Assembly: GCA_900088475.1 (NCBI GenBank) | Contig: FLMG01002722.1 | Coordinates: 1 to 45,527 of the forward strand | Source: Hyphochytrium catenoides | Taxonomy: Eukaryota > Protista > Hyphochytriomycota | Direction: 5' to 3' | Length of the DNA: 45,527 nt | In this document: positions 1,489 through 45,527 of the stretch, piece by piece | Layout: each line of letters opens with the position of its first letter | Numbering within the stretch: position 1 is the first letter of the stretch | The notes under the pieces: model-generated | What the model was told of the DNA's origin: nothing | Databases searched by the model: none | What the model saw: the letters and a program-made list of their open reading frames with translations, nothing else | Program-made: the position numbers and the translations under genes

Positions 1489-1519
1489 NNNNNNNNNNNN
1501 NNNNNNNNNNNNNNNNNNN
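1489..1519. other. Assembly gap (31 N)
   Basis: Run of N flanked on the right by a (GA)n tract. Confidence 0.98.
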
Positions 1520-11497: not shown

Positions 11498-14400
11498 CTA
11501 TTCCCGTCGTCGGTAGTCTTTATCCTTCTCTAAGGACTCCTTCAGCCTCTCAAGGTCCTCTTTCCATAAGTCCTGAGGAGAGGACGTTTTTAGCTTCTCT
11601 AAGGCTGCTGCTTTCGTCTTAAACTCTTTCTGCAGCTGTGACACTTTTTCCATAGTGAAGGCCACGATGGGCGTGTTCAGGAGATAATCATACGCCTGTG
11701 TGGACGGGAGGGTATTGAGAGAAGAGAGAGAGAGATGGGTCGGACATCTGGAGAAGGACTCAAAGAATGACGCTCAACCTGGAGGTGTAAGACAGACTAA
11801 CATTCAGTGTCGAGGAAGACAAATAAAGTACCTTATCGTCTTGTTCAACAGCTATATTCTCAGATGAAGAACCATCTGCTAATTCTTGATCAATCTGGGC
11901 AGAGTTATGGGAAGATCAAGGAAGGTAAGGTTGAGGTCCACCCAAACACAGAGACGAGGAATGAGTGTTATGAATGAACGAAACATTATCACTTACGTTA
12001 TCTAGATCCTGGTCCGTCTTCTGGCTAAACTTGTCAGCAGGATCATAACCTTGGGCGGCCAGAAGCTGCACTACTGCAGCTTTGGATCTGCCCGACCGTG
12101 TTATATCCAACATTCCGCTGGAGATCTCTTGTGCGAAACGCACCTAGAATGACACAAGTACAAGAGTCAAACGCGGTTTCCAGGAGCTAGACGCACAAGG
12201 GTACAGAGGGAAGGAAGACATGGCACTCCGAACGGCTGGGTAGCGGTCCAAATAAAGATGCGAGGCAAGGGATTGTCAGGGACTCTTCTTCGGCTCTTAC
12301 TTTGTTCTGCAGCTTGCGGATCTCCCTAGCCAGTTCTGCCTCAACAACCTTTTTTCTGTTCTCATAGAACTCTAGGCGCACATTATAGAACTCCTGGGTA
12401 AGGAGAAAACGTCTAGTCAGAGCGTTCCACAGGGACCAGAGACGAGGGCATACGTAGAGCAAGGAACGAAGAGGATGTGGAGTTATTGCTCGAGAATTTC
12501 CGCAGGAATAAGGGAGAGCCACATCTTGCAGGGTGGCCGGGGAAGCAGTCAAGTTGCACATCGCAAAGAGGCTCGCAAATAGACGAAGAGGTGAAAAGAA
12601 GAGTGCGGAGACCTTCAGTATGTCTAGCACCGTGTCATATTTCTTAATGGCTCCAGTGGAATCAAACGCGTGCATATTTGTGGTCAAAAGCTGGCTGCAT
12701 GTTACGGGTTTCATGGTCAGAAACTGCCCCGCCGGTATAATAGAGTAGTGAAGGCAAAAGGACTGTTCAGACGACAGAGATCTGAACGGAAGAGACAAGA
12801 CTCCAAAAGTAAATTAAGCCTTTGCCCATGCTTCATCTTCTACAGCCTGTCACTTTACTAGGCAGGCATGGCTAGAGAAAGAGAGAAGAGAGACAGTAGG
12901 AACATAGGGTTCGGTCTTACTTTTGAAGTTTGAAAAACTTATGGTACCCAACAGCCTCAGCCTCTTGTGCTGCTTGCCGAGTGAGCTGCACCACAAAGTC
13001 GACGGAATGCTCTGTGTGGTACTCTTTGAATCCCCGAACCTCAGCTTTGGAGACCAGAGATATCTTCGCAGACGGAAGCGCGGGTTGACCAGCGCAAACA
13101 GTAAGGAAGAGGCGGTGACAAGGAGGGATTTAAGCGTGAGGTGAGGGAGAGCACCAAAAGCCTCTTTTCGCTCTGTCACTCTTCCCTTCGGTGGCGGCCC
13201 ATCCTATTCTGGGCAGGTCATATCTTTCTTTTCTGTCTCTCTCCCTGAACAACTAACTCCTCTGTGCCTATAGTCCTGAAGTCTTACCAGGAAATCTTTG
13301 AAGTCCTCTGTCCACTTGCCCACTGGCAGCTCTGAAATGCGGAGTTCAGTAGCTGACTTCTTGGTGCAAATGCCAGTTGTAACATAGACGCCTTGAAGAA
13401 CCAGAGAATGCGGCGTTTAGTCTACCGGAACCCCCACCGAGGTCTAGAGGAAAAGAAGACAAGCAAGCAGAATGTAACCTCGGCGGGAACGAAGGCAGCA
13501 ATAATAAGGAAGGTGGGAGTATGAAGAGACGGAGAGACTGCTACAAAGCCCACCCTGCTTTTCTCCTTCCCGTATGGTTCCCTTAAAGCCCTTAATCCAA
13601 GGGATCATCTTCTTGGGCTCCTCGCCGTCAAGCATCCTCTTCAGGTTGTCAATCAGCTCCAGAGGATGATGTGGAGGCACCGATGTGGACCATCCAGTCC
13701 CGACTCCATCACTACCGTTTACCAAGAGCAGGGGAATAACGGGGACATAATACTCTGGCTCCACAACCGTCCCGTCATCCTCTATGTACCTTGAACGCCG
13801 TATGAAACGGAGACAAGAAGCGTAAGCAAAGTATCTCAGGAGAACTAAAGGACGCGGAAGTAGTGCTGGCGTAAAGAAATGGGAGGCCAAGCGATGACAA
13901 GAGAACAGAGGAAAACTGAACACCCTAGGACGGTTTGCCTTGTTAATATGGCTATAAAGAGATATTGAGAGGGCAATGGCAAGTAGCGAAGATAGCAATG
14001 AATTGGCATGCATGAATAGTACCAGGTCAGTCTATGATGGAGAAAAACAATGCGTGGGTCTAAGAGATCCTTACTTTAGCAGCTTCTCGTCACTTTCTAA
14101 GAAAACCTTGCGTGTATGAGGGCCAAGCTTGGTAAAGATGTATCTGACGCAAGTTGAACAAAGTCAGAACAAGGAGCAAGTGGGCAAGTGTCCTCGCCTA
14201 TCTTCCAGTCCGCCGCAGTCCATAACACGTCACCACCTTGGCTCGTCAGCATTTCAAACGTAAGCCTAGCTTACCTTGACCGAGCTGCATCCTTGCCGCC
14301 TTGCAACCGTGTACCAAACTGTCCCGCCGGGAAGAGTAGAGGGACGTTGTTGGAACCTACAAAGTCCTATAGTCACGGCAGAGGGAAGCTAGGTAAGGAT

Positions 14401-17400
14401 AGTGAATGAGATACAGGGGAAGCAAGTGGGCAGGGAAGAAAGGGTACCACTCCTAAGAGTCCTGATGACTGTGGATTGGCTAATGATAAAGGACAGCTGT
14501 TATATTTATATAGTATATAGTAAGTTGGATGGGAAGGAGGAAAAAATGAAGACGAATGAAGTCCCTGCAATTGTAAAGACAGGGGCATTCTCTCACCTGA
14601 GCCATCGAGGTAATGGTCATATGGAGAGAGACTTCTCCATGATTGTAAGCAGTTTGTTCTGCGCAGTAACCAGCAAGTTGCGCGACCTTGACTTCCTTCA
14701 CAGCATTTTTCTGCGGGAAGAGATAGTGAACGATCGAGCTTCCAGATAAGAAATAGCATCACTAGGACCGGAAGGCTGTTCCTGCTAGCTTTTAACTTGG
14801 CCCGTTGTCTCGAAGTGCTGAGTTTGTACTATGGGGAGAGTGCATTGAACCTGGTCTCCCTATGCTAAGTGTATGTCCGGCAGCTGTACTCTCCACCTCG
14901 CATCCAACGCAAAGCTCTCTCTCTCTGCTCAAACCAGCAGTGAAGTCGCACCTTAAAGCAGCCAAAGAGAACTTTTCTCTGGGACGGCTTGAGACCATCT
15001 ATGACAGAGGGCAGAGATCGTTCGTTGTCCGCCGATGAGAACTAATATGAATAGAGAGAGATCATGAGCGTGAAAGCAGTAATCCACCGCTATGATGAAG
15101 AGACTTGCGATGATACTCATTCTCTACTTCTCCGCATTTTTACTCTTTCCCTTTCACGAATGTCTTCACACCGCCTCCCTTTATTGCTCTCCTACCTGTA
15201 TGAGTTCCTTATTGACAAAGTCCGAGTATGTGACTGTTCCGTGGCTAACGTCCAAGAATGTATCCGGTGAATACTTTTCCAGCCATCGCTTGCGATCTGT
15301 GACCTGGACGAGAATAGGAAGCGCGGGGAATAGGGAAACTTTACATTCTAAAGTACTTACAAGGGACGCGCATTAGCTGGAAGAGCTTTTACACTAAATT
15401 AGAATCCTCAAGGACGTTTCAAACGCCAGACAACGGAAAAGCGACAGTTCAATGGGGAAGTGATGTTACACCACGAAGCTATCCTACAGCTAGACCAGTG
15501 CCCAATCAAAAGTGTCTTATTATGGTTTCCTCACCCTTGTCTTATTGAAAGCCATGTCAATGAGGTCCTCGTCCTCCATCCCACTGTACGTGAATGTCAC
15601 GCGATGTCGGTCCAGTTGGCCAAAATATTCTCGGGCCTCTGCACTGGTGCTGGTTCCTAAACCCTTATAGTACTTGATCTGCCAGCCAGCCAATCCTGAG
15701 GAGGAAACACAAGAAATTAGTACTGATAGAGTGTAAGAAGTACAAAGAAGCGAAGAGAATTGGGGCGATGTAACCAAGAAGGTTCTTTGAGAACGTTAAA
15801 GGGTTTATGTAAACAGCAACCGCGCCAGCACCTACTCTGGGTTATAGCACATAGACAGACAAGAGGGATTCAATTTTGCTAGCCTTCACCTTTGGGACTC
15901 TCGAGCATTTCCTTGCGCCAAGTCTGGAACTCCGGAATAGAGAAAAAAGAGTGCACCTCGGCCCCTTTCTTTGCTTTGATGATGGGCGTGATGAACTCCG
16001 TAAGGAACCCGTCAACTTCCAGGAGCTACGAAACGGAAGAGAACACGAATGAATTTCAGTGTTCTAATCTGTCTACTTAGTGATCTAACGTGTCTTAACA
16101 TCTGATGACTCTCTTTATAAGCGCGAGATCTCTGCCTTACTAACCTTTGGCCAAAAGGTGTGGAAGAAATTGATAAGGAGGCCCTTAATGTGGGATCCGT
16201 CATGGTCCTGATCTGTCATCAGCATAATTCGACCGTATCTAGGAGCAATGATGTCAGCGGCTCGACCCTTGCGGTTGCTGAGTCGCTTTTACTAAATGAT
16301 AGAGATCCAACTCGATTACGAACCTGAGCTCTTCTCTCTCTTTCGCTGTCTCATACGTCTTATTGAAGTTGAGGCCAATAATGGAGCAAAGGCTCACGAT
16401 TTCCTGGTTCTGACTCACGGCTTTCAAGGACGCCCCTCGAACATTCAACACCTTGCCCCTTAGGGGGAATACTCCGTACTTATCTCTTCCGATGACACTC
16501 AGACCAGCGACAGCGAAGGCTTTGGCACTATCTAGAGTGTGGATTAAGTTGCGGAGGATAAATAGAGGATGCAAAAGGTTGATGCGTTAGAGAGGAATAG
16601 GATAGGAGTAGGGCAAGAAGAGAAAATGAACCCAGCGAAGGTACGATGCAGGATGAACTATGTAGGTAAGAGACGTAGCCTGATCCTATCAATCATCCAT
16701 AACTAACTCAACTCTAAATAACGTAAATAAAGGCAGTGAGATAAGAAGCCTCGCGATGGATCAGAGACATACTCTCCTACCTCCCTCTGTCAAGATAAGA
16801 GTACAATCCTTGCTTTTTGAGGTTCCAGCGTCATTTGCATCCTCCAGCTTGGGAATAAGAAGAAGGCTTCCTTTCCCTTTTGGCGCCTTTTTAAGGACGT
16901 TTTGTTTCTGTCGAGCTTGCGCCCAGCTTACCACGAGTTCTACGATGCCAGAAGAAGCGATGACCTCTCTGCAGAAAATCTGTTAGGAGCGGGAAGCACG
17001 AGAGGAATGCTGCGATGTCTGGGCTAATGAAGGTCAGACGGGGATAGAGAGAAGAATGGTAAGCAGGCTAGCAGAGCAAGAGAGGTTGGCACCGGATGCG
17101 ATCGAAGACCATATCCACCGCAGTGAAGAAATAGAATTTAGATGTAAATGACCGACGGCCAACTCGAAAGGAGACCGGGTCCATTACTTTCTGAACTTGC
17201 TGCTAAGAATAGCCGCTGAGCCAAACAGATGGGGCTTGGAGGTCAGGAACTCCTTCATCTGGTTATCGAAGGTAGGATTCTCTATCAAACAATTCACAAA
17301 TAGACAACAGTGGGCCTTCACCTAGTAATAACATTCGGAGTTTGCAAAAAGAGAAGGCGAAAGCACTGAAAGTTAGAAACGGTGAGTGTTGGAGGAGATC

Positions 17401-19916
17401 AACAAAGGAACCCTACATGTGCAGGTGTGACGTTAAGATCTTTGTGCTTTTGGTTGATATAATCCGCCAGGCTCTTCGCCACCTGGTCCAGCACATAATT
17501 CGCATGTGATCCGCCACGTGTGGTGAACATATTGTTCACAAAGGTAACCTACAGGGCAGAACGGAAGTTTGTGAACAAAGAACTGAGTGTTATCTACCGC
17601 TCAATACGGTTGGTACTACTACGAAGAGACACGCTTACTACTGCTACGGAGAGACGCTGTAGTGGATAGTTTATCAAGACAAAGAAGCTCAAAGGGTAAA
17701 TTGGGAATGAGATTTAAGCGTATGAGAGCAGTGTTGCCCGAGACACAACAGAGGCTTCTGGAACAATGTACGATGGTGACAAACTGTGAACGTGAGCTTC
17801 TCCAGTTCAGTCGTACCTGCTGCAGCCCGTTAGGGGATGGCATAAGAGCTACTTCCCAGCGGTCATTAAGTCTCGCATAGTGTACGGGTGGAGGAGGAAT
17901 GTCTCTGCTCTTCTCTCCTTTCGCCTTCTCTCTCCGTTCTTTCTCAACCATAGCATCTCGATAGAGATTCACATACTCTAAAAAGTTCTTGGGCTTAACC
18001 GCCTCTCCGTTCAGACAGACTGTGACACCTTGAACACACCCAGCAATGTCCAGCACTCTCCTCTTCATGAGTTCTACGGTATTGTCATGGCTGCTCTCGA
18101 TCTCAAAGCCTGGCAAGAATGGATGCGAAGTGCAGCGATGTGAATACACGAGAAGAGAGAATGCTTCAGAGAAGCTTTGAGAGACGAGAGTGCAACATGC
18201 GGCCGAGCCTCCTATCCCAAAAAGTTTACACCTTAATCCCCTGCCCCTTTCCACTAGCAACATGGTCTCTCTACTCGCTTGTTCTGGATCTCTCTTTAGA
18301 AGATCTCTATTCATTTTTTAGCATGTCAGAAGTGTACGTACGGCTAAGATCAGGAACAAACGTGACGCGCGTGAAATCTTTTTCGCCGTCTTTCAACTTT
18401 GTTATCTCTGCCTTATCTTTCTCTTGCATGTTATTTCTCCAGACCTGTGAAGATGATAGTGAGCTTAGGGATTCCAAGGCAGTGTATTTCTCAAAGCCAA
18501 AGAGGGAGAGACTCATGGGGGAGACTACGAGAAGGTGGCTCCCACGTATCAAAGTACCGCACTGAGACTCCCAAGAGCAGCAGGGATCAATCAGAAGAAT
18601 GTTGAGTACCTGCTTAAACTTAAGTCCGGTGGAAGAGTCTGCCGTCTCGACCATGAACTCAGAACTGAAGATATTAGTCAGCTTCGCGCCATAGCCATGC
18701 CGACCGCCAGTCAGTCGCGCCACCTCATCGTCGAAGTTGGAGCCCGTTAACAGACTTCCGAACACCAACTCGGGGACGTATACGCCTGGAAGCTAGGTAA
18801 GTAAAGTGCTGCACATATGACGATCAATAGAAGAGCAACGGCCATCAAAGGTGCCTCTGATTTATAAAAAAGACAGGAGTGAAAAGACTAGAGGAGAGCC
18901 TTGGGCCATCTAAACTAGATATCTACCATATGGCGTTCTCATGGATAATGAAGCACTGACGTAGGCATCCAACGAGCGAGAGAACAAAGTATGAAGCGCA
19001 GGGACGGAAGGAGTCCGAAGAAGGGGGTAAATGGAGGCCAGTACCTCATAAGCATTATCCCTAGCTCGCAGTGGGCAAGAAAGCAAAGCCGCCAAGAGTG
19101 GAAGAGGCAGTAGGAGATTAAGGGCAAGAGAAAGCCAAGGCCCCCATAATTCTATCCTTTGCCATTGATGATGACTCGGATTGTCCTGTGACCACGCACC
19201 TTCCTCTTTGTGCTTTTGCACGGTGATTCCTCGGCCATCGTTCATCACTGACACCCGGAGATGGCCGTCATCTTCATAGTTAATGTTTACGTCAATCCTT
19301 TTCATGCCTGGATCTCTCATCTTGTTGTCCGCGGCATTCACTAGAATCTCGTCAAAAATCTTGAACAGCGCAGGGACATATTCAAGCTCCTTAGAGACCA
19401 TTCGCTCTTTCTTTGCATCATAGAGCCACATCGTTTCCTTGATGCTCTCCACGGAGCCAACGTACATGCCTGGGGCCGGAGGAGAGACGAGGTAGGCGAA
19501 ACATGAGGCGTCTAGTGCTGAGAGATAGGACTTGGGGTGCGATGGGGCGCAAGGTATAGGAGAGAAGACCTACGGACACGGGCCAAGAGGGGACACGAAG
19601 GGCATTGATAAAGGAGAACATGCAGCTAAAGGATGTTACCTGGTCGAAGGAGAACATGCTCTACCGGCGTCTTCCGTTGATAAAGTTCTTCTATCGTCTT
19701 CTCTTTGGAAGCAGCTGCAGATGCCTTCGTACTCAGCGAGGACCCATGGACCGAAGCCAACACACGAAGCCTACTACCACAAGATGAAGCAGTAACTCCT
19801 GCAGCGGCGGAGATGGGATAGAGCCATCTCTTAGAGCCTCCGCGCGGAAGCACTAGAGCAGTCAACCGCATTGCGGCGACCTTGCCGCCGCCGACATTGA
19901 CCGCCCTGGAGATCAT
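11498..19916 (-). CDS. TOP2: DNA topoisomerase II (eukaryote-type IIA), likely mitochondrial; 25 exons, 1236 aa in my model
   Basis: GT-AG exons: 19916-19640, 19469-19200, 18785-18610, 18444-18342, 18109-17817, 17548-17417, 17321-17188, 16968-16781, 16531-16324, 16238-16145, 16025-15890, 15695-15535, 15303-15196, 15041-14952, 14710-14597, 14366-14275, 14143-14075, 13789-13554, 13391-13288, 13063-12921, 12694-12613, 12393-12301, 12143-11997, 11894-11832, 11695-11498. They join into one open frame of 3711 nt. Motifs: [71 protein letters not shown], catalytic RSRYIFT. Confidence 0.96.
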
Positions 19917-26700: not shown

Positions 26701-29700
26701 GAGACATCGCCCCTGTGCCAAGGAACCTCCTTGGGCCAAAATGGGAACATCATAGAGTCAGCTTCTGTTGACGTGTATAGGCCTTGCTTGTTCAGGTGCT
26801 GCCAGAGACAGAGAGCCATAAGAGCAGCACGAAAGGGCATTAGACAGAGACGTTCATCTTGAGTGTAAACAGTGAAAAGCAAGGACGGACGTCCAAGAGA
26901 ACAGCTATGTAGAGAGAGATAGAAGGCAAAATAACGTCGCGGTCGCCGCGCAGCGGACTGACGATGAAGGACGCGGAGAGAGAACATATCTGTCAAGAAA
27001 AATAGAGAGAGAGAGAAAGAGACGAGAGAGAAAGGAGAGAAAGAGACTGAGGGAGATGGGAAGAGACGTAGAGAGGCAACAGAGACAGGAGTGAAAAGTG
27101 TGAATTTGGGATGAACGTGGCATGGGGAGTCGAGAGAGCGCAGATGCAGAGAGAGAAGGAATAGCGAGAGAGACAGCCGTACAGAGATGGCCTGACTGGA
27201 TGAAAGATGTGGGGAGAAAGAGAATGAGGTTTTTATAATAGAGTCCATAGAGTTCAGCCACGGAGCTGAGTATGAGACGAAGCCCAAGGATTAAGATGAG
27301 TGAGCCTCTACACCTCAGAGTGCTGGTGTTCTAACAGCGCTTCCGCGTGGTGGAAGGACTCGCCGCAGGCAGGAAAGGCGCAGACCCAGCGCCGAATCTC
27401 TCTGGAGACGGTGCCCAACACAATCTTCACGTTATAGAAAGACTCCCGGTAGAGCTCAGAGGAGAATGAAGGAAGAGGCGTTAAAGACGACCAGGGCTCG
27501 GCGTTGAGATTGCTTAGTTCTCGAGTAAGGGCCATCCTGTGACGGGAGTCCGACTGAGAGGGCGAAGGGAGAGAAGAGACACTGCCCTCAGGGTTGACCA
27601 GCTGGACGTTAAACTGTGTCAGCGCTTCTTTTAGAGCGAAAGCACGGTCTGGCTGCGGCTTCATAACCGACTGGGAGGAAGAAGAGGAAGACTAACGTGA
27701 GCAAAAGAAAGGAGGCGGGAGACGGACGCCAGACTATCTGACGGCCAATGGTAGGAGGAAGCTCATGCGCGTGTGAGTGAGTGGGAGAGAGAGAGAGAGA
27801 GAGAGAAATAGAGAGAGAGAGAGAAAGAGTGAGAGATAAATTGTAGAATGAGCGAGCGGGAAAGGGAAAGCCTGAGAAATGGAGAGGAGACAGAGTCGAG
27901 AGACGATAACTCATTGAAAGCAATTGAGGAGGCAACGTAAGAGAAAAACTGGGAAAGAGTCAATCTCCTTGCCTTCAGTCTCTCTCTCTCCTTCTCTGTC
28001 ACAGGAGACGCTCCGCTAAGATAGCCATTAGAAATATCTTCTACCAAGAGAGACCACCATTGCGCGAGGGAACCAAAGTTCCGGAAGAAGAAGGAGATAG
28101 TAGGAGCTAGAGAAGGAGAGGAAGTAGACGTTGGAGAGCTTGAGCAAAGAGAAGGAAGAGAGCCATTGGGAGAAGGAGGAGAGACTGCTGTGGCCGGCGA
28201 TCCCGAGGAAGAGAGAAAAGGAAGGAGAAGGTCATGACCTGGGCGGGCGTCTAGCAGCCTCTCCAGCAGGTAGGAGTATGAAGGCAACCAAGGCATCTAG
28301 GGAAGAAATAGTCAGACCTTGGCAAGGTGGCGGCGAAGTAGATCAAGAAAAAAAAGCGTGAAGAACCTAAGGAGAGAAAGATAGGAACACAACGGTGGGA
28401 GACCAAGGAAGACAACAGAGGGCCTCCCTTACCTCCTCTTGCGCCAATGAACGCGAAGCCACTTTCTCTCGAAAGATCCTGCTTCTTCCTTTTCCTCTCT
28501 TCTTTGACACACATGAGAGCTTTCTTCTCCTCCCCTGAATGCATCTGTCTCCTCCTATGCTGCTCCTCCCACCAGCGCTCGACTCTACCATCTCCCCTGC
28601 CCTGTCCATATCCTTCTGTCCCCAGAGGCTTTCGTCGTCCACCGGTTGAAGCTGAGGCTCACCATCATGACGCGTTCTTGGCGGGGCTATGGGTTGCTCT
28701 CCAAGTTCGTCAGCCACGGCTGGGCTGGCACCAGTCTCTGTGTCTTCTTTCCTCTCTCTACTTACAAGCGTGCTGGATAGAACTCCGTCAAACTTGATGT
28801 AGGAGGATGGAGAAGGGCGTGCTAGAATGCGCTGTAGCTGTTAATAACGAGAAGAAGGAGATCCTGAGCGAAGCGCTAAAGGAGTAGTTCCTCTTAATTA
28901 AGAGACTTTCACACTTCTGCCGCTTATCATTGCGCGACCCACTCCCTCCTACACTTGGTCTTGTCCTCTCTTCCTTTTCCTTGTCAAGGTTGCTGACCAT
29001 CCTGAAAATCTTTCTGTAGCCTTGCCAGTCCTCTCTCTTCCTGCCCATCATCTTCAATGTCTGTCTCTCGCGTACCTGTTTCGGTGTGAGGTTGATTCCA
29101 GGAGAGAAGTCGAGATGAGTGCGTGGCGCCGGCACCAGTGCGTGAGCGGCTTGGTAATGTCCACACTCACAGATGTGCGAAGCAAAGAGCGAGGAAGGTT
29201 GTGGTCTCTTGCGAAAGACGAAGCAAGGACACGTTATTCCTAGAGGGAGATAGTAAGCGAGAGAAGGAGGATTGAGGTTGTCAGAGGAGGGCTAATGCAG
29301 GTCGGTAAGTGGAAGGTAGGGGCGGCCAGAAACTCCAAAGGTACAGATAGGAAGAGATGTATTGCCGAGGCAAAGCTAAAGGATGCTAAGGCTAGGGCTT
29401 CTAACACTGTGGAGAGTGCAACGAATGGACTCCAGGTAGGACTGCTTAGGGACCGCTAAATAAAGAGACGAAGATCCCCGCTAAGGGACACGCGACGTTC
29501 AGACAGTAGAGAAAGGAAGGCAAGCGGCTGAGATTGAGGTTTGTGCGGATAGCCATCAATCGATGGGGAGCCAGCTCTTGGAAGGCAAAATAGCACTAGC
29601 ACTGGCAGAGACGTATGTCCAAACGTTGCCGTTGCAGGAGAAAGACGAGAGGAGGAGAGAAAGGACATGACTGACATGCGCAAAGTAGAGTACATCAAGA

Positions 29701-35494: not shown

Positions 35495-36873
35495 TTATGA
35501 CCCGCATATTTGGATGTCATCTTCGGGTTCTACTCGTTCCTTCGTCAAGATTCTATTATAACGTAAGAGTAAGTCCTCGACTGCTGTGTGGTGCCCATAA
35601 TGCTGGACTCCAAGGATTCTTGCCAATCTCCTTCCTCTTTCTTTCTCTCTCAATACAGAGAGAACTTTTTCGCGACAAAGTCATCCACATTATCAGGTTC
35701 AAAGAACCAGTTGATGCTTCCTTCGTCTGTGTTTTCTACGTCGCTGCAGAATTCTTGTGTCCCTTGTTCTTCTGCACCTAGACAACTGTAGGCAGCAGGA
35801 AAAGCTCCAGCCAAAGGAATAACCACTGGCGTCCCACAACAGAGAGATTCCGCGATGGTGACACCAAAAGTCTCAGAGTCTGATGCGGTGACATGAATAT
35901 CGGAAAGGGCGTAACAGCGCGCGAGGGTCTCTCTCCCTAATATCATGCCGACGAAGAAAATTCTCCTGTTAGTCTCTGTTTTTATCCGCATTAAGTACTC
36001 CTCCCAGCTCGACTCAAACTTCCGTGAGTCTAGGAGTTCCATAGAGACTCTCTTCGGCCCGAAGAGCTCATAGGATAGACTGACAAGTCTATCCCTGTCT
36101 GGACCATCACCCGCAATGAGGAGCTTCGCGTGGGGATGAAGACTGTGATGCGCCATTGCTTTAATAAGAAACTCCACGTTCTTCTCCTTTCCTAGCCTAC
36201 CAACGTAGCAGAGAAGAGGGCCCTCTTCTTCTTGCTCCATAATCTTTCCTGTAGGCACTTTTGAGGTCTTTTCTTCATCGTCTGCACTACCTCTTTTTGA
36301 TAGTAGGCACTTTGCGGGAGAAAATACTTCCGTGTCAACTCCGCTCTTCATTAGGTGAATTTTCTTTCCGTGAGCAAGCACTGCCTGATCTGCAATCTTC
36401 GATGGGATTCCTATCTCTTCTGCAAAGAGACCGACGATCCGTAAGTAAACATTAGCATGAGTCCACGTGGCTAGGTTGTAAAACCATTCTGGAAGATCAT
36501 ACGCCTTCCCATACTTCTCCAGCGCAACGTGATGCGAAGCGTAGATTTTGATGCCTCTCAACCAAAAGAGAGGCAAGAGCAAAACAAAAGGGAGGCAGAG
36601 CGGAAGAACAATATGTAACAAGTCGTAAGGAAGACGCTGGAAAGGATTCAACAGCTCAAAAAATAGCCGAGGGGGAATCATCCAGAAAGTCCGTTGTTCT
36701 TTATAGAAAGGCTGGACGATGGATGGTCCTACATAGTGGCATTCTGTCCCCTTCACTGAGCAGACGGTGACAGAATGTCCTCGAGCCCGAAAACCTCGGA
36801 TAAGGCCGTCAAATCTCACCGCAATGCCAGAGACGTAAGGGGGAAGGTATTCTGTTACCACCAGGATGTGCAT
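35495..36873 (-). CDS. Glycosyltransferase family 4 (GT-B), intronless, with a frameshift near the C-terminus (pseudogene, assembly error or recoding)
   Basis: N-terminal MHILVVTEYLPPYVSGI..GHSVTV, then SGVD..F, YVGRLGKEKN, LLIAGDGP, and the GT4 E-x7-E motif SETFGVTIAES. The zero frame stops at 35650. The -1 frame from the A5 run (35666-35670) continues VLSVLREKERGRRLARILGVQHYGHHTAVEDLLLRYNRIL...TAA (35495), which resembles the usual GT4 C-terminal helices. Confidence 0.85.
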
Positions 36874-39144
36874 CTTTCCTCTCGTTCCCCTCTGCAATTC
36901 AGGATGCTCAGCGACCTGGTAGATGCTCACTCTTCTTCTCCTTCTCTGCCCAACACTTTCTACTTGTCTTCTTCAGCCCTGCTTAGGCAAGGTTATATAC
37001 GAGTACTTCTTGCAACATTAAGCAACATTAATGGAGAAAGAGGATCGATGAAAGTTCCTGAGCTATTGCAACTCACAAGAGCAGTTTTCCGCCGGTCTCT
37101 TTGCATAGGCCACGTTATGAGGTTGCGGCAAAATCCGTTGTACTACTGTGACCAGCATTTGATGTAGACCTGTTTGCGTCTGACAGACCAAGTGAGCGTA
37201 GAGTGAGTGAGCGCCATGGCGACAGACAAGTCAACCCGGCTGAACGGTTTAGATTGACTACTAGAGGGAGCCTAAAGCTGGGGCCGAGAGCGAGTAGGGC
37301 GGCAAGTTGAGGCTCACGTTCAACGGTAAACCGAAAAGAAGGTTTTGGTACCTTTATCTGGCTCTCGCATGACTCTCGCTTGTGTCATCCCTCTTTTATT
37401 ACTTCTCATTGTTCCTTCTTTTTCCTCCCGCTCTCTGTCTCGGCCATCACTCTTTTTCCACATTTCATGCGTTCCTAAGATAAAATGTTTTGAACGGGGT
37501 CATCGAATCCTTTCCATGCGTTCCTAAGATTCCATGTTGCTCTTTCGTTGCCATTCTTTCGTCGTTCTATCTTTTAGACTTCTGCTCTATGTTGGATCTT
37601 CGACTGGTGGTAGTCCCTTGTAAACTCGCTCCAGACTACCGAAGAAGAACTCGAAGAAGCATCTTCTTCTCCCCCACGAACCAGGAAACTACGACCTCTA
37701 CGGGTATCGTCAGAGCGGAGTTGAAGTTCCAACCAACCAAAAGAATAATAATCCATGCAGCCTAAATTGGTTATTGAACTGTCGACGCAGTTTCCACGTC
37801 AGCAATGAGTGCACAGTCTATCGACTGTCGCAATGTACTAGCTCTGCACCTCGGACTATTTCAATCGTTCTACTACAGTACTCGGAAAATTGACCTACTT
37901 CTTCACCGTGGACTTAGGTCTATCGACTATCGCGAACTACTTCTACTACTACTGACAATGAGCTACCATACACAGATACACAGACAGTATTTGTCAAGGA
38001 GCTTGTGAAAACGGAAGAACCACTCTCAACCATTGCCATTGAGAACGGACCCTGGCGCTATGCGAGGTTTACAACCGCCGTCCCTAATCACACCACCTCT
38101 GTCTCAAGGTGGGGAATTCCTCTAGTCTAAGTCCCAACCACCAGCCGCTTTTACCTAGGAAAACGTTCTGATGAAGAGAGGGAGTCAATCCGTTACGGGA
38201 CCTGTAGAACTAGGAGAAGGGGTATAGGGTGATAAAACTATTTTATAAATACTTCCTTCTTCTTCGTCACTCAACAAGGGCACTCAACAAGTGATAAAAG
38301 TGTTCTTTAAATTACTCATTCGTTCTACCGAAAGTCGGCATCCTCGTGAGACCGATAAACAAGATTCTTAGTCGCTATGTTTCCCCGCCTACCTGCCGCC
38401 ACCACTGCAGTGGGTCTACTCACCCCCATGACCATTGACAAGGAGGGTCGCCCGACTTCACTATGTTCTATCTTCTATGAGATTTTAGTTCTACAACATC
38501 ATCGTCCACCAACCGTGTCGCGGCCATCTTCGACCCCGAGACGTTCTTTCCTTCCTCATTCTTTCACCATATACGTAGAAAGCTACATCATTCTTGCCCT
38601 TCTGCTGGCCTCTGTTTGCCTAAAGCCTAATAAAGCGCTAACTAGCCGCTCCTACAACCATGTCCACGTCCTCCTTACTCTGTTGACATCCGCAGTTGAA
38701 AGAGAAGAATCGGTACATCGGGTAATATTTTCCACGATCCTCATTTCTTGGCCATAACTTGACAAGCTGCACAATGCTTTACAACAAAGACTGCGATGGA
38801 AGAGGGCAGTTAGATTGGAGAACAGACAGAGTTTAGTGGCTGCCGTTGTTGGCCATCACTATCCCAAGCCAGGCGAGAGAACAGATACCAAAAGACACGA
38901 CGCATATCGCATATCGCTACTAGAGTTATAAGCAAAGTGACAGGATTACTTCCGACCGCGCCACCAGGCGCAATATTTCTACAAGTCTGAAACATCAGGT
39001 TGACACCAAGTAGAGAGATTCACACCAGAGGACCGAGAAGCAAGAGCAAATCGAGGGAATCGTCTTGGAACTATATCATGGGCGTGGGCATGAATCAGCA
39101 CAAGGAAAAGCCAGAAGATTGACTGAAGTTAAGAGAAAGGGATA

Positions 39145-40866
39145 ATGTTACAGGCCATCCTCTATCTCCAGACCTTTCTGAGCACTCTAATGTACTCGGT
39201 GGTCATGCCCTCCGTCCCTCTATATATGGACGTTGTCAATAACCCTCACTCCTCGTCTTCCTCAAGTGAGCTGTCAATCACCGATGGCTGCATAGCGGGT
39301 GGAGAAGGAGGAGAAGGGTCTTCTTCATCCATCTATATCGGTATGGCCGTTGGAGTATACCCCTTAATGGCTGCCGTAGCGAGCCCTCTACTTGGATGGT
39401 GGTACCAGAGGGCCAAACTACTTTTCCCTCTCCTCTTCTCCCTCTTATGTGTTATGCTAGGCAATGCCCTGTACGTTGTGGCTCGGTTGGTGAAGAAAAG
39501 CCCTTCTACAAGAGCATTTGTCGTCATTGGTGCCCGAGCTATCATTGGCGTTGGAGCAACCAACGGTGGACTAGCGAGAACGCATTTCGCGACAGTTACT
39601 CCTGCTGTCGACAAGGATAAAGTGATGGTCATTGTAACAGCTTTCGAGACCTTTGGCCTACTCCTAGGGCCAGTCCTCTCGGGTCTCGTGGCTGACGTGG
39701 AGTTCTCTATCGGTCCAGTACTAATAGACCAATTTTCTCTTCCGTCTCTTATTGCGATGGTCCTAGCAATGCTAAGCGCAGCTGGATTTGTTATCTATGA
39801 GAAAGGTCTCATTGAGAAGAGAGAGAGAGAGGCAAATAAGAAGAACTCTAAGGTTGAGGAGCATAAAAGACCAAGAGGAAGCAGAAGCCCGTCTATTGGG
39901 GAGAAAATATCTGAATATGGAGATGCGCCACGAGGGAGAGACTCAAGTGAGGTTTTCCTCAGGGAAGATGACTTCGTAACGGCGCTGGTTTCGACGGTTA
40001 ATGGCAGGAAGAAAGGGCCGAGAGGATTACACGTGATGCTTTCTCTGTCGTTCATTGTCAGCAGCACATGGGCGGCCTTTGAGACGGTTATGATCCCTTC
40101 TACGTGCCGCATGTACCAGTGGGCAGTCAGAGAGAACAGTTTTCTTCTGGGTGGATCTGCTTGTGTTTGCGCCCTAGTCTTCGTCGCTTACCTCCTCTTG
40201 CGGAAGCGCTATCTAAGCATCCAACGCTATCAGCGTCACCTCTATTCAACGGCCCTCCTTCTTCTAGCACTCGGCGATGGCTTGTTGATCAACCTATACC
40301 CCCTCGGCTCCTCGTTGCCTATGTTCGTGCTCCTCTTTTCTGCACTTGGCCCTCTCGCAATAGGCTTTGCCCTCTCCCAGGCATTGGGCTATTCCCTCTA
40401 TATGCTGCTTGTTTCGTCTGGAACGGAAGGCGTGGCCGTCGGCCGGCAGACGTCGGTTAACTTCCTGGCACGCTTTATCGGTCCCGTGGTCAGTAGCGCC
40501 CTTGCCGATATCCTTTTATTAGGAGATCCTCTGAAGTACGGCTCAGTCACTTGGATCTTTAACGTCGTGCTGCTGTCAATGGCCTTGGCCTTGGTCCTGA
40601 CCTTCTGGGCTGATCTTTGGTACCAGGCCTTGCCACAGGAGGAGAGGCATGCCGAGGCACGATGCATAGAAAGGATTAGCAGTGGTGCCACTTTGGTGGG
40701 CTCGATCTTTGATCAGCCGGACATAGGGTCAAGAAAGGATAGCGCAGACTTAATAGAAACAGCGAACGGGTATGAATCTGTTTTCTCCTCCCCTACTTCC
40801 TCCTTTCTTCCATTCAGTCAGCCTTTAACGTCTCCTATAGCTCTCCAGGGACACAAGAAATTGTAG
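39145..40866 (+). CDS. Major facilitator superfamily transporter (MFSD8-like), intronless, 573 aa
   Basis: About 12 hydrophobic segments in two bundles split by a hydrophilic loop. Motif-A-like SPLLGWWYQR, GARAIIGVG, and G...GP in both halves (GLLLGPVLSG; ARFIGPVVSS). An in-frame stop lies 15 nt upstream of the ATG. Confidence 0.88.
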   Translation: MLQAILYLQTFLSTLMYSVVMPSVPLYMDVVNNPHSSSSSSELSITDGCIAGGEGGEGSSSSIYIGMAVGVYPLMAAVASPLLGWWYQRAKLLFPLLFSLLCVMLGNALYVVARLVKKSPSTRAFVVIGARAIIGVGATNGGLARTHFATVTPAVDKDKVMVIVTAFETFGLLLGPVLSGLVADVEFSIGPVLIDQFSLPSLIAMVLAMLSAAGFVIYEKGLIEKREREANKKNSKVEEHKRPRGSRSPSIGEKISEYGDAPRGRDSSEVFLREDDFVTALVSTVNGRKKGPRGLHVMLSLSFIVSSTWAAFETVMIPSTCRMYQWAVRENSFLLGGSACVCALVFVAYLLLRKRYLSIQRYQRHLYSTALLLLALGDGLLINLYPLGSSLPMFVLLFSALGPLAIGFALSQALGYSLYMLLVSSGTEGVAVGRQTSVNFLARFIGPVVSSALADILLLGDPLKYGSVTWIFNVVLLSMALALVLTFWADLWYQALPQEERHAEARCIERISSGATLVGSIFDQPDIGSRKDSADLIETANGYESVFSSPTSSFLPFSQPLTSPIALQGHKKL

Positions 40867-43276
40867 CCCTAGAGTAACTCTTCCACTTTATTTATTTTTT
40901 TTGGGGTCGTTTGCATCAAATCGCAGGTTGACAGACAAGGGTTATCTTTAATAATGCATCATAGTGCTACATTTCTTTTAGCTTCAATAAAATCAGCTCA
41001 GGAGACCGGAACGTTGATTGACGTTGAGCAGGACGTTAGACGAACAGGAAGTGAAGATTCGAGGAACGCGGCGACTTGTTGCCCGATTCCTCCTAAATAA
41101 CTTCTATGTGGGAATCTAGAGGGCGGGTAGATGACAACGCAGGAGGACCTTTATCTTTTCAGACATAGCCCTTTTCAGATGTGCCAAAGGAGCATATGTG
41201 CCAAAAAGGAGCATCAGTCCCATCACCAACCCTAATCTTCTCACCGCTGCCCCTTTACGCCTCTCTCTTCCAGATTTTCGCTCATCATATATCGCCTCAC
41301 TAAGAACATCCGACTACAAGCCAAATGACCTACTGGTCGTACAGAAGGAAGCGTAAGAGACCTACCATAACTTGCAATACCAGCACTTCTGCTGTGGAAT
41401 CTGATCAGATGCAAGTATCATCAGTACTAAAAATGCACAAGAAGAAGGGGAAAACATCCACTGGCATAAGGAACAGCGCTGATTCCATGATTCCGGAGAA
41501 GAGGTAATAAGTAGAAACAGTAGTAGTAGATACACTTGGGATGGGAAACATCCCTGGTCAACAACAAATGAGCAGGATCATTCAAAGCATCATTGTGGAT
41601 GGACCAGGAAGGGTGGCAAGAGGTAGTTCTAGAGCGGGCGGGAGATAGTAAGACTTTACCACCAACAAGTGGCTTGGGCACACGAAGCTGCATAAGAAGC
41701 AGCGACCTAAAAGGTGGATAAAACCTCTATCTTGGAACCCTCTTGTACCCCCATTTTTGCACTCTCTTTATCATCTGCTTTTTTTCGTGCTCGCCTTCTT
41801 TTGCTCCTTCTCTTTTGTCATGTTTGTCTCCTTTTCCTCGTTCCTTCTTGAGCGACTTTGCCATGCGAAGGGCTTGATCAGATTCAATATATGGACTGGT
41901 CTCCACCCACAGTAGACAAGCACCGCCTGCTATGGTCACGCAACCGCTCGTTTTTTCCTCTAGTTATCAAACTCACCTATGCGCTAGCAGTCTCCTGTGT
42001 TACTACTTGTACCATCAGCAATGCCATCCTCCTCGCTCAAGACTTCTTTCACTACCATTTTTAATTCGTTTATCACCGCCCTCTCGCCGAGTTTTCTGTT
42101 CTCAATCTTTCATCTTTCGTACCCATTCTCTCCCACTGATCTCCTCTTCTTCTTCTCCCTTGCTCCAGCTCCTTTGCTCTCCAGACGTAACACTTGCCAT
42201 TTCTATTCTCTTTTCTTTGAAACACTCCTCTCCTCCGTATCTCTCTGAACGTTGTCGGGGCTAGAACTATATCCGTTTTCGTTCCCCATTTTTTCCCTTC
42301 AGACTTTCCATCTTCTGGGTTTGCCTCCTCTTTTGTTCTTTCTATCTGTGTAGCTATGTTCGCTGTTACACATAGTTCCACCACTAACATCTCGTTGCCT
42401 CCAATCTCACCTTTTCCACGTTATTCGGTCCTTTCTGGCAGGTACACAGATACTACTCTTGTCTCTCTCTTCTTTCTCCCGTCCTCTCTCTCTCTCTCTC
42501 CGTCCATGTATACGTTACCGCTTCCCCGGCCCTTAAATTTCTCGTGTCTTGATCTGACAGCCTCATACCTTCCCCTATATACATTACCATTTTTCTCTGT
42601 CTCTTTCTCCTCCCTTCAGGCATAAGGGTCTTATTTTTCTCAGTAACGGCGAGGCTTCGGTCTAGTACTTCTTGTCTGTGTCCTTGCACTAACACGGGTC
42701 AGTTAACTAGTACTACCCAGCTGCCTTTCTTATTACCCTGGTCTTCGTTTTCGTTGCTCGCTTCCTGCAGGTCACTCACACAAAAGGGGCCTCGAGAGAG
42801 AGAAACAGGCATATAGAGAAGCATCGAGAGAGGAGACATATAGAGAGACGATTTATTGAGGTATAGAGAGAGGCCGGGCACACCATTAGGAGCAGGGGAC
42901 AACATCAGAGAGTGGTTCCTGTCTCCTATCTTCTTGCGTGCTATCCCTGCCTCTGCCTCTTACCACCTCGCTCTCTCGCTGCCTCTTGGTATTACTGCCT
43001 GCTGCGTGATGCTGCCCGTGTCTTCTCCGTACTTTCCTACGGCTTCTGCCTCATGCCCCTAGCGTGATGGGTGCTTTCTCTTGCACCCTGGTGCTGTCCT
43101 CTTGGTCAATGTATTGCCTTGGCTTTGCCTCCTCCTACCGCCAATTTGCAACCAAGGGCTACGTGTCTCCTCTGTCTCGTATGGTCTCCTGCCTCCTGTT
43201 ATCTACTACTGCCTTGCTGTCACCACCCAGTGCTGCCTTCTGACGTCCACCTTTTGACCCCTATCATCTACCTCAT

Positions 43277-43311
43277 GCCTCCTGCTGCGCCTCCTGCTGC
43301 GCCTCCTGCTG
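43277..43311. repeat. 12-bp tandem repeat GCCTCCTGCTGC (~2.9 copies)
   Basis: Read directly; it lies within a C-rich block (~42930-43510). Confidence 0.8.
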
Positions 43312-44279
43312 TCGTCTCCTGTGTCCTACTGTCTCTTGTCTCCTGCTGTTCTTAGTTATATAGTAATCCCTTGCTCCTTCCTGCAGTTGCCCGCTGCTTC
43401 CTTCCTCCTGGTGCTACCTAACCCCCTTATGCTGTGTCCCTCGCCCATGGCTGCTTGCTGCTGTACCCGGTGCCGCTGCCATGCCTCCTCCAACTGCCTT
43501 GCACTACCCCAACAAGTGACTAAGTCAAGAAAGAAAGTAAGAATGAGAAGAAGTATCTTGGAAGGAGCAGAAAAAAGAGACTAAAAAACAAAGCAAAAGA
43601 GTGATCAATCGTAACTAACATCACGGAAAGAGGAAAAGTTAGAGGATTAAGTAGAGAATGGACCAAGGGAGAAGATTATGAGGGAAAATGAGATAGGGCA
43701 TATTGGAATTGGGGATACAGCTTATCCTTCTCGCTAAATTGTAATGGATGGTGGACGATAAGGAGCTCCGGTAGATAGCATCAAAGGTCTCTAGCAATAG
43801 CTTTACTGTAAAGAGTACTGGAAGTTACTGCTGACGTTCGGACTCTGTACTGGAAGTCTCTCGCACACTGTCTCTGCACTAGACCGTGCTGGTCTTCTGC
43901 GTTAGACTTTGCAGATGGAAGTTCTGATGGCGCTCTGAACTTCTCACTGAACACGACCGAAACTCTTGAAAGGCTTTCTTTCTTCTTGTCCCTTCTGAAG
44001 TCTTTCTCTCTCACTCCCTTCTACTTCTATCTTCTTTGCATGTGTTGCTCTTTCATCGTAGAACTTGGATATAGGAAGTAGTTCAGTATTAAGTTAGCGA
44101 ACTACGTAGTTTAGGTAGTTAGCTCTAGTAGAATCACTAGCCAAGAGCTTGATGAGCGCTTGTTCACTTTGATCAACTAATTCATTCATCAATCTCCTAC
44201 GAAAAGCACAAGCCCAACACTCCCTCATTTGATGAGCACTCGGCTAAAGAAGGGTAGTAGGTAGGTAGGGATGAGTAAT

Positions 44280-45381
44280 TAGGGATGAGAAGGATTAGGG
44301 CATTAGGGCACCACAAATACCAGGCAGGCCGGTAATCAATAGACAGCATCGGGACCGGGCAGTTGGCAACGGCAGCTGGTTAGGTGCTGAGGTATTAACA
44401 ATAGAGCAACTACTCAAAAATAGGACAGCGGGTTTGAGAAAGGCATCGGGGAAGGGAGTGAGCAGCGCGTTAAAAAGCAGCGGGATAGGAAGTTGGTTAG
44501 CAGCAATTAACGAGAGGGTAGTAAGCGTGTTGGACCGAGTTCTGGCGAGGGCAGTTGGTTAGGGCTTAGGAGCTAAGCGCAGGACAGCTTGTTAAAAGGG
44601 CAGCGGGCAAGAAAGGGCATCGGGTAAGAAAGAGCATCGGAAAAGGGAAAGAGCAGCGCTAAAAAACAACGGGTTAATTGAAAGGGTGTTGATCAGCAAG
44701 CGAGTTGGACAGAGGGTGGAAAGCGTGTTGGAGCGGTTTGGGGTAGTGAGTGGGTTAGTGAACGGAATAGTGAGCGGGTTAAGGAAGGGGTAGAAAAGGG
44801 CAGCGGGTTAGAAAAAGGGCAGCGGAAGAGGAAAGAGCATAAAAGAACAGAGCCGCTTAGAGTTAGGAATCGCGAGTAGAATCAAGAGGGTAAGAAAAGC
44901 AGCAGTTAGGAAAAAGCAGCTTAGATTCAAGAGGGTAAGAAAAGGCAGCAGTTAGGAAAAAAAGGGTAAGAAAAAGCAGCAGGTAGGAAGAAAACAGCAG
45001 TTATAAAAAGAAAGAGCAGCGGGTTAGGTTGCGGTTAAGAAGGGCAGCGGGTTAGGGCAGCGGTTTACGAAAAGGTGTTATGGTAATGGTTAGGGTTAGA
45101 GCAGAGGTTAGGGCAGCGGGTAAGGGCAGCCGGTTAGGGCAGTGGGGTTAAAAAATTAGCAGATATAAAGAAAAGGAAGCGGGTTAGATTGCGGGTAGGA
45201 AGTGCAGGGGGTTAGTGCAGCGGGTAAGAGAAGCGTGTTATGATTAGGGCGAGAAGCGTGTTATGGTTAGGAAAGAGGGTTAGAAGAGTGGGTAAGGAGA
45301 GCGGTTTTAGGGCAGCCAATTTTAGGGCGGTGCGAAAGAGCTGCAGTTAGGGTGGGCGGTTAGGGCAGCAGGTTAAGCAGA
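44280..45381 (+). repeat. Degenerate telomere-associated array (GGGTTAG / GGGCAGC half-units, often with A-tracts)
   Basis: Strongly G/A-biased strand with recurring GCAGCGGGTTAG, GGGTAAG and TTAGGG. Fidelity increases toward the window end. An internal ~34-bp duplication lies at 44882-44915 / 44927-44961. Confidence 0.8.
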
Positions 45382-45527
45382 GTGTTAGGGCAGCGTGTTA
45401 GGTTAGCGTGTTAGGTTAGCGTGTTAGGTTAGCGTGTTAGGTTAGCGGGTTAGGGTAGCGGGTTAGGGCAGCGGGTAAGGGCAGCGGGTAAGGGCAGCGG
45501 GTTAGGGCAGCGGGTTAGGGCAGCGGG
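45382..45527 (+). repeat. Terminal 13-bp tandem repeat, consensus GGGTTAGGGCAGC; candidate telomere
   Basis: Eleven consecutive units in exact 13-bp register plus a final GGG: GTGTTAGGGCAGC, 4x GTGTTAGGTTAGC, GGGTTAGGGTAGC, GGGTTAGGGCAGC, 2x GGGTAAGGGCAGC, 2x GGGTTAGGGCAGC. The G-rich strand runs 5'->3' toward the sequence end. The repeat itself is certain; its telomeric role is inferred. Confidence 0.85.

What the first reader, a model, noticed from the sequence alone, without database searches (positions are those of the whole stretch)
45382..45527. Candidate unusual 13-nt telomere repeat GGGTTAGGGCAGC
Seen: the window ends in 11 in-register 13-mers, with the G-rich strand pointing outward, after ~1.1 kb of progressively less degenerate copies and a gene-poor zone. 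Known: that polarity and the proximal-degenerate/distal-perfect gradient are typical of telomeres. Most protists use 6-8-nt repeats (TTAGGG, TTTAGGG); long repeats are mainly known from yeasts, some filamentous fungi and Allium. Inference: the unit is a compound of canonical TTAGGG and CAGCGGG. That implies a telomerase RNA with an extended template (about CCCUAACCCGCUGCCCUAA) or a recombination-based mechanism. It keeps a GGG every 6-7 nt, so it should still be G-quadruplex competent, and it carries a CpG. I do not recognise this motif from any described telomere.
Basis: partly seen in the sequence, partly recalled or inferred. Interest (0 to 1): 0.88.

Follow-up and report, generated by a model that had tools for sequence, protein, structure and literature searches.

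The report
Candidate 13-base telomere repeat, unproven
A scaffold from an oomycete-related protist ends in a short, imperfect run of a 13-base G-rich repeat (TTAGGG plus CAGCGGG) that looks like the inner edge of a telomere with an unusually long unit, but one scaffold end cannot prove that.

Summary
The window ends (45382-45527) with 11 in-register 13-mers plus GGG, G-rich strand 5'->3' outward. Behind them lie about 380 nt with weaker 13-nt periodicity, about 740 nt of G/A-rich relics, and a 4.7-kb stretch with no recognisable gene. It is less clean than described: only 3 units are exact GGGTTAGGGCAGC, 4 differ by one base, and 4 are an identical 3-mismatch variant.

The window is a short-read scaffold (31-N gap) of a eukaryote. 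Its TopoII and Trf4 genes are closest to oomycetes but distant, so it is probably a non-oomycete stramenopile, possibly a hyphochytrid.

No tandem TTAGGG or TTTAGGG dimer occurs anywhere in the window, and all subtelomeric relics are of the 13-mer type and in one orientation. The motif was absent from the metagenome and viral collections, gave one chance hit in prokaryote genomes, and appears in no telomere paper (19 of 26 rotations searched).

Best reading (about 0.5): this is the proximal edge of a telomerase-made telomere with a 13-nt unit, cut off by assembly. Main rival (about 0.3): a telomere-associated minisatellite lying inside a conventional telomere. Other chromosome ends, raw reads, telomerase RNA and BAL31 were not testable here. 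If true, it is a new variant of a known kind.

The parts
45382..45527 (+). Terminal tandem array: 11 in-register 13-nt units plus GGG, consensus GGGTTAGGGCAGC (that is, TTAGGG + CAGCGGG)
   Evidence: lag-13 identity 0.95
45447..45527 (+). Near-consensus distal block: 6 units with at most 1 mismatch plus GGG. It has 13 GGG tracts with 3-4-nt loops and is the only extended (G3N1-7)x4 region in the window. The last 37 nt are pure consensus.
45395..45446 (+). Block of 4 identical variant units GTGTTAGGTTAGC (3 mismatches, no GGG). Block-wise variation indicates intra-array duplication.
45000..45381 (+). Degenerate zone with weak but significant 13-nt periodicity. It includes short runs of near-consensus units (45041-45067, 45093-45146) and a duplicated block, 45003-45089 versus 45163-45249 (160 nt apart, 77% identical).
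   Evidence: (D1, D7)
44260..44999 (+). G/A-rich relic zone. It has scattered GCAGCGGG(T)TAG and TTAGGG fragments, all on the + strand, with 17-, 31- and 33-nt periods and no 13-nt periodicity.
40867..44259 (.). Stretch with no recognisable gene between the last gene and the repeats. It includes a C/T-rich block (about 41750-43500) and a 12-mer GCCTCCTGCTGC x3.7 at 43277-43321.
39145..40866 (+). Last recognisable gene before the end: MFS transporter ORF (573 aa)
   Evidence: PF07690, E 1.4e-21

Best explanation
The last 146 nt are the proximal (variant-repeat) edge of a true telomere whose unit is the 13-mer GGGTTAGGGCAGC. The rest of the array was lost because a short-read assembler cannot pass a perfect tandem repeat.

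Inferred mechanism: a telomerase whose RNA carries a template of one unit plus an alignment overlap (about 15-19 nt, a permutation of CCCUAACCCGCUGCCCUAA) adds whole 13-nt units to the 3' G-strand. The innermost units are no longer resynthesised. They drift and are duplicated by slippage or unequal exchange, which gives the blocks of identical variants. Older material decays into the A-rich relics further in.

Shown: the position at the end of the window, the polarity, the periodicity gradient, the G4 motif, and the absence of canonical short-unit dimers. Inferred: that the array continues beyond the scaffold, that it caps the chromosome, and that telomerase makes it.
For: (1) The array is at the extreme end of a 45.5-kb window that carries a 31-N scaffold gap. 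This indicates a short-read scaffold whose end is expected to stop roughly one k-mer into a perfect tandem array, and the last 37 nt are pure consensus.
(2) The G-rich strand runs 5'->3' outward; GC skew is +0.385, and every telomere-like motif in the last 1.3 kb is on the + strand.
(3) The unit contains the ancestral TTAGGG core and keeps GGG tracts every 6-7 nt. 45447-45527 is the only extended G4 motif region in the 45.5 kb.
(4) There is a gradient of 13-nt periodicity, 0.95 -> 0.45 -> background. The relics are of the compound type (TTAGGG followed by CAGC, not by TTAGGG).
(5) No TTAGGG-TTAGGG or TTTAGGG-TTTAGGG dimer exists anywhere in the window, so nothing points to a different short unit at this end.
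(6) No recognisable gene lies in the last 4.7 kb.
(7) Long compound telomerase units built on a TTAGGG-like core have precedent: 12 nt in Aspergillus oryzae and Allium, 10 nt in Yarrowia, 10-11 nt in Galdieria (PMC9498494; PMC3622300).
(8) Telomere motifs are known to be labile in stramenopiles: TTAGGG, TTTAGGG and TTAGG.
Against: Only one end of one scaffold was examined. There are only 11 units, 3 of them exact. The variants are block-wise (4 identical, then 2 identical), as in any minisatellite. No second chromosome end, no reads, no telomerase RNA and no TERT were available. No stramenopile is known with a unit longer than 8 nt. The array could equally stop a short-read assembler if it were an internal or subtelomeric satellite.
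Confidence: 0.5

Rival explanations
1. It is a telomere-associated (subtelomeric) minisatellite. In this reading the 13-mer array and its relics derive from telomere-like sequence and evolve by slippage and unequal exchange. The true telomere, with a short unit such as TTAGGG or TTTAGGG, lies just beyond the scaffold end.
For: The array is short and heterogeneous, with blocks of identical variant units and higher-order duplications (blocks about 160 nt apart) next to it (D7, D8). This is typical satellite dynamics. The nearest sampled lineage (oomycetes) uses TTTAGGG, and TTAGGG is ancestral for stramenopiles. A short-read scaffold would break in such a satellite just as readily.
Against: There is no tandem canonical dimer anywhere in the window, even among the relics. 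Units become more, not less, consensus-like and G4-competent towards the end. The strict single orientation with the G strand outward is required for a telomere but only optional for a satellite.
Confidence: 0.3
2. It is an interstitial G-rich minisatellite at an assembly break and has nothing to do with a chromosome end.
For: The other end of the window also stops in a simple repeat, (GA)n at 1-60, which shows that this assembly breaks at repeats. The genome is full of microsatellites.
Against: The window has 1.3 kb of strictly one-orientation telomere-like relics, a gradient towards the end, a TTAGGG core, a flank with no recognisable gene, and no copy of the motif elsewhere in 44 kb.
Confidence: 0.08
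3. The array is terminal but is maintained by recombination (ALT-like, rolling-circle or gene conversion) rather than by a telomerase with a long template.
For: The block-wise variants and higher-order duplications are what recombination produces. A 13-nt unit is long for a telomerase outside the yeasts.
Against: The unit retains the telomerase-type TxAyGz core and G-tract spacing. Telomerase units of 10-12 nt are documented. Recombination-maintained ends usually use much longer satellites or retroelements (own knowledge).
Confidence: 0.07

Closest known systems
Aspergillus oryzae 12-nt telomere (dodecanucleotide; Kusumoto et al. 2003, cited in PMC9498494; the unit TTAGGGTCAACA is from my own knowledge)
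   Same: A regular long unit made of a TTAGGG core plus a 6-7-nt extension, in an organism whose relatives use a plain 6-7-nt unit.
   Different: The extension differs: it has no second GGG tract, whereas the present unit has two G-tracts. A. oryzae is a fungus, not a stramenopile. Its unit was proven at chromosome ends and the telomerase RNA of relatives is known. Here nothing is proven.
Allium telomere (CTCGGTTATGGG)n, 12 nt, synthesised by telomerase (PMC9498494)
   Same: An unusually long unit that was long mistaken for, or masked by, subtelomeric satellites. It shows that the decisive tests are BAL31-NGS and TRAP.
   Different: It has no TTAGGG core, it is a plant, and it was validated experimentally.
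Yarrowia lipolytica 10-nt telomere (1.5 units GTTAGTCAGGGTTAG were used to find the telomerase RNA; PMC9498494)
   Same: It has a GGGTTAG core with inserted bases. The method of finding the telomerase RNA with a 1.5-unit query transfers directly.
   Different: It is 10 nt rather than 13 nt, it is an ascomycete yeast, and its template has been identified.
Stramenopile telomeres: TTAGGG (ancestral), TTTAGGG (oomycetes, xanthophytes), TTAGG (Aurantiochytrium) (PMC3622300; PMC11139960)
   Same: Same supergroup. The TTAGGG core is retained, and the motif is known to change repeatedly within the group.
   Different: All described units are 5-8 nt. A 13-nt compound unit has no precedent in the group.
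Proximal telomere variant repeats of human chromosomes and telomere-associated minisatellites (own knowledge)
   Same: Variant units sit in blocks at the inner edge of the array, with the same orientation as the telomere and a degenerate gradient inward.
   Different: In those cases the distal homogeneous array is known. Here it is not assembled.

Membership tests
Telomerase-type telomere repeat | Tandem array at the physical end of the chromosome | tested here: inconclusive
   The array runs to the last base of the window, and the 31-N gap marks a scaffold. A scaffold end is not a chromosome end.
Telomerase-type telomere repeat | G-rich strand runs 5'->3' towards the end | tested here: met
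   GC skew is +0.385. All TTAGGG, CAGCGGG and GGTTAG motifs in the last 1.3 kb are on the + strand and none on the - strand.
Telomerase-type telomere repeat | Long homogeneous distal array of exact units | tested here: not met
   There are only 11 units: 3 exact, 4 with 1 mismatch and 4 with 3 mismatches. The last 37 nt are pure consensus. Truncation by a short-read assembler could explain this, but that is an inference.
Telomerase-type telomere repeat | Same repeat at all or most chromosome ends | not testable with these tools
   The organism is absent from the searchable collections. There was no self or close protein hit. The 26-mer and 19-mer scans gave 0 hits in metagenome contigs. In prokaryote genomes the 26-mer gave 0 hits and the 19-mer 1 chance hit. 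The 19-mer gave 0 hits in viral contigs.
Telomerase-type telomere repeat | Complementary template in a telomerase RNA; TERT present | not testable with these tools
   The only matches to CCCTAACCCGCTGCCCTAA (up to 3 mismatches) are the array and its relics. There is no Rfam hit in the window. The rest of the genome is not available.
Telomerase-type telomere repeat | TxAyGz-like unit able to form G-quadruplexes | tested here: met
   The unit is TTAGGG + CAGCGGG. 45447-45527 matches (G3N1-7)x4 throughout and is the only such extended region in the window.
Telomerase-type telomere repeat | BAL31 sensitivity; telomerase (TRAP) products with the same period | not testable with these tools
   Requires wet-lab work.
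Telomere-associated (subtelomeric) minisatellite | A different, true telomere repeat lies distal to the array | not testable with these tools
   The sequence stops inside the array. No canonical dimer is seen anywhere in the window.
Telomere-associated (subtelomeric) minisatellite | Block-wise variant units and higher-order duplications | tested here: met
   Four identical GTGTTAGGTTAGC units and 2 identical GGGTAAGGGCAGC units. Duplicated block 45003-45089 / 45163-45249, 160 nt apart. This is also expected for the proximal part of a real telomere.

The most novel reading that the evidence does not exclude
A non-oomycete stramenopile (possibly a hyphochytrid 'pseudofungus') caps its chromosomes with (GGGTTAGGGCAGC)n. 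That would be a regular 13-nt telomerase product: the longest regular telomere unit known outside budding yeasts and the first above 8 nt in stramenopiles. It would imply a telomerase RNA template of about 15-19 nt and telomere-binding proteins adapted to a TTAGGG/CAGCGGG compound site that carries a CpG.
Probability: 0.45. Interest if true: 0.75.

Novelty: new variant of a known kind. Interest (0 to 1): 0.55.

Why it matters
If the 13-mer is the real telomere, it adds an independent case of template lengthening in a lineage where telomerase RNA is essentially unknown. The motif gives a ready 1.5-unit query for finding that RNA, the approach that worked for Yarrowia. It also raises three questions: how Myb/POT1-type binding proteins follow a compound unit, whether the CpG in each unit is methylated, and whether motif searches that assume TTAGGG or TTTAGGG miss chromosome ends in pseudofungal assemblies. 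If it is only a subtelomeric satellite, it is ordinary.

Tried and rejected
(1) Looking up the window's own proteins to reach other contigs of the same genome. The exact look-up of the MFS ORF found nothing, and the homologue searches returned no self or near-identical hit. The genome is therefore not in the protein or contig collections, and other chromosome ends could not be examined.

(2) Scanning public DNA for the motif. The 26-mer gave 0 hits in metagenome contigs and 0 in prokaryote genomes. The 19-mer gave 0 hits in metagenome contigs and 0 in viral contigs. It gave one isolated internal hit in an Arthrobacter contig, which I judge to be chance; a few such hits are expected in a collection of that size.

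(3) Literature search for 19 of the 26 rotations and strands of the unit. Only primers and unrelated sequences turned up. Seven rotations were not searched.

(4) Rfam on the whole window found nothing.

(5) A chytrid fungus as the source was suggested by the GT4 gene. I rejected it as the organismal signal because Trf4 and TopoII point to oomycete relatives, and because the GT4 copy is a long branch outside all chytrids.

(6) Pirsonia diadema as the source is unlikely: its assembly consists of HiFi contigs, whereas the window has an N gap. Hyphochytrium catenoides fits in assembly type, N50 and intron statistics, but this is not demonstrated. I could not map the SRA run ids of the best Logan hits to a paper.

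(7) The telomere-like fragment at 41226-41257 was considered as a telomerase RNA template. I rejected it because the two halves are separated by 10 nt.

Full report
OBSERVATION. The + strand of the window ends with 11 in-register 13-mers (45382-45524) plus GGG. TRF calls 45358-45527 as period 13, 13.2 copies, 90% matches, score 200. GGGTTAGGGCAGC with up to 1 mismatch occurs 12 times, all on the + strand at or beyond 45049, against 0.03 expected by chance.

From proximal to distal the units are:
- GTGTTAGGGCAGC, once
- GTGTTAGGTTAGC, four times
- GGGTTAGGGTAGC, once
- GGGTTAGGGCAGC, once
- GGGTAAGGGCAGC, twice
- GGGTTAGGGCAGC, twice, followed by GGG

Only 3 units are exact, and only the last 37 nt are pure consensus. 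The array is real and far beyond chance, but it is short and heterogeneous, and the variants come in blocks.

SURROUNDINGS. GC skew is +0.385 in the last 2 kb. In the last 1.3 kb, TTAGGG (18), CAGCGGG (13) and GGTTAG (24) occur only on the + strand. Lag-13 self-identity is 0.95 in the array and 0.43-0.45 in 45000-45381 (shuffles 0.30 +/- 0.03). It is at background in 44260-45000, where 17-, 31- and 33-nt periods and A-rich spacers dominate.

The degenerate zone contains higher-order duplications, for example 45003-45089 versus 45163-45249, 77% identical. The last recognisable gene, an MFS transporter, ends at 40866. No ORF above 110 aa follows it, and the only one of those ORFs sent to Pfam (41932-42264) had no match.

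No TTAGGG-TTAGGG or TTTAGGG-TTTAGGG dimer exists anywhere in the window; the best is 1.7 units at 45088-45099. The block 45447-45527 is the only extended (G3N1-7)x4 motif region in 45.5 kb. The consensus carries one CpG per unit.

WHAT ORGANISM. The window is eukaryotic and gene-dense.
- It carries a topoisomerase II gene in about 19 coding pieces on the - strand (about 12.2-19.5 kb), a class II aminoacyl-tRNA synthetase, a UCH domain, a Trf4/Cid1-type nucleotidyltransferase, a GT4 glycosyltransferase and an MFS transporter.
- The Trf4-like ORF hits oomycetes only at the top: Pythium, Aphanomyces, Lagenidium and Globisporangium, at 38-40% identity over 74% of the query, E 1e-90 to 1e-76. The next group, insects, is at about 1e-42.
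- The best TopoII match is P0068 (55.7% over 1033 aa), from Logan run SRR15309490. Trf4 homologues from Logan runs, one of them traced to the neighbouring run SRR15309472, are 70-80% identical to Globisporangium. P0068 is only 43-45% identical to all other TopoII proteins retrieved, so the window groups with it.
- The GT4 ORF, in contrast, hits only Chytridiomycota (35-42% identity) and branches as a long branch outside all of them. I read this as a candidate fungus/pseudofungus gene transfer, not as the organismal signal.
- A 31-N gap at 1489-1519 marks a scaffolded short-read assembly.

Together this points to a stramenopile related to, but far from, oomycetes. The published Hyphochytrium catenoides assembly would fit: Illumina/Platanus, N50 35.6 kb, 3.64 introns per gene, mean intron 208 bp, and no mention of telomeres (PMC5795050). 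The identification is an inference. Pirsonia diadema is less likely because its assembly is HiFi contigs.

WHAT IT MOST LIKELY IS. Five features are what the inner edge of a telomere looks like. The array is at the scaffold end, with the G strand outward. It has a TTAGGG core with a regular second G-tract. Order increases towards the end. The relics all have one orientation and are of the compound type rather than the 6- or 7-nt type. There is no trace of a canonical short-unit array.

A short-read assembler is expected to stop roughly one k-mer into a perfect tandem array, which fits the 37 nt of pure consensus at the very end. That is an inference, because the k used is unknown.

The block-wise variants (4 identical, then 2 identical) show that the assembled units evolve by slippage or unequal exchange. 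Both proximal telomere variant repeats and subtelomeric minisatellites behave this way, so this feature does not discriminate between the readings.

My estimates are:
- About 0.5: the 13-mer is the telomerase-made telomere unit.
- About 0.3: it is a telomere-associated minisatellite inside a conventional telomere.
- About 0.08: it is an interstitial satellite at an assembly break.
- About 0.07: it is a terminal array maintained by recombination.

COMPARISON WITH KNOWN SYSTEMS. In stramenopiles TTAGGG is considered ancestral. Oomycetes and xanthophytes use TTTAGGG, and Aurantiochytrium uses TTAGG (PMC3622300; PMC11139960). The review PMC9498494 adds TATAGGG, TGTTAGGG and TGTAAGGG from a survey of green algae, ciliates and stramenopiles, without saying which motif belongs to which group. 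Nothing above 8 nt is described in stramenopiles.

Long regular units outside budding yeasts include the dodecanucleotide of Aspergillus oryzae, CTCGGTTATGGG of Allium, the 10-mer of Yarrowia and TTTATT(T)AGGG of Galdieria. The present unit would work like these, through a lengthened telomerase template built on a TTAGGG-like core. The Allium story is a warning that satellites and true telomeres are easily confused without BAL31 and TRAP.

On membership in 'telomerase-type telomere repeat': polarity and G4-type unit were tested and met. Terminal position is inconclusive. A homogeneous long array was not met in the assembled sequence. Presence at other ends, an RNA template and BAL31 or TRAP were not testable here.

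NOVELTY AND SEARCHES.
- The 26-mer (2 units) gave 0 hits in JGI metagenome contigs and 0 in prokaryote genomes.
- The 19-mer (1.5 units) gave 0 hits in metagenome contigs and 0 in viral contigs, and one isolated hit in a prokaryote genome that I judge to be chance.
- 19 of the 26 rotations and strands of the unit occur in no telomere paper of the library.
- No paper in the library links Hyphochytrium catenoides with a telomere motif.

If confirmed, the motif would be a new variant of a known kind of system.

VERDICT. Interest is 0.55: a specialist would want the read-level check, which is cheap and decisive, but a single truncated scaffold end does not justify more.

Noticed in passing
window 35650-36930 (-): The named homologues of this intronless GT4 glycosyltransferase ORF ('SQD2-like') down to about E 1e-59 are all Chytridiomycota (35-42% identity), and no oomycete appears in the list. 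Trf4 and TopoII of the same scaffold point to an oomycete-related stramenopile. The window copy is a long branch outside all chytrid sequences. This is a candidate fungus/pseudofungus gene transfer or differential loss.
   Followed up: partly
window 1-60, 503-691, 1146-1268, 1894-2015, 3333-3406, 27785-27836 and many more: There is an extreme density of (GA)n/(CT)n microsatellites and GA-rich low-complexity tracts (most of the 88 TRF rows). The window itself begins inside a (GA)n run, so the other scaffold end also breaks at a simple repeat.
   Followed up: no
window 1489-1519: A run of 31 N, which is a scaffold gap. The sequence is therefore a scaffolded short-read assembly, and terminal tandem arrays are expected to be truncated.
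   Followed up: yes
window 41226-41257 (+): An inverted, interrupted telomere-like fragment (AACCCTAA, 10 nt, CCGCTGCCCC) lies about 4.2 kb inside the end and is complementary to subtelomeric relics (repeat finder I3, I14). It is not a contiguous template. It may be a relic of an old rearrangement, or chance.
   Followed up: partly
window 41750-43500 and 43277-43321: A C/T-rich block on the + strand contains the 12-mer GCCTCCTGCTGC x3.7. It switches abruptly to G/A-rich sequence at about 43500 (GC skew -0.21 to +0.39). There is no convincing ORF and its meaning is unknown.
   Followed up: no
window 45003-45089 vs 45163-45249; 44443-44475 vs 44634-44666; 44513-44537 vs 44711-44735: Higher-order duplications at a spacing of about 160-200 nt lie inside the degenerate zone. 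The subtelomere therefore grew by duplication of blocks that already contained decayed 13-mers (D7, D12, D16).
   Followed up: partly
window about 12187-19467 (-): The topoisomerase II gene is split into about 19 short coding pieces, with short gaps (roughly 80-330 bp) where neighbouring pieces could be compared. Its best match is an intronless Logan contig from a probable oomycete run (55.7% identity).
   Followed up: partly
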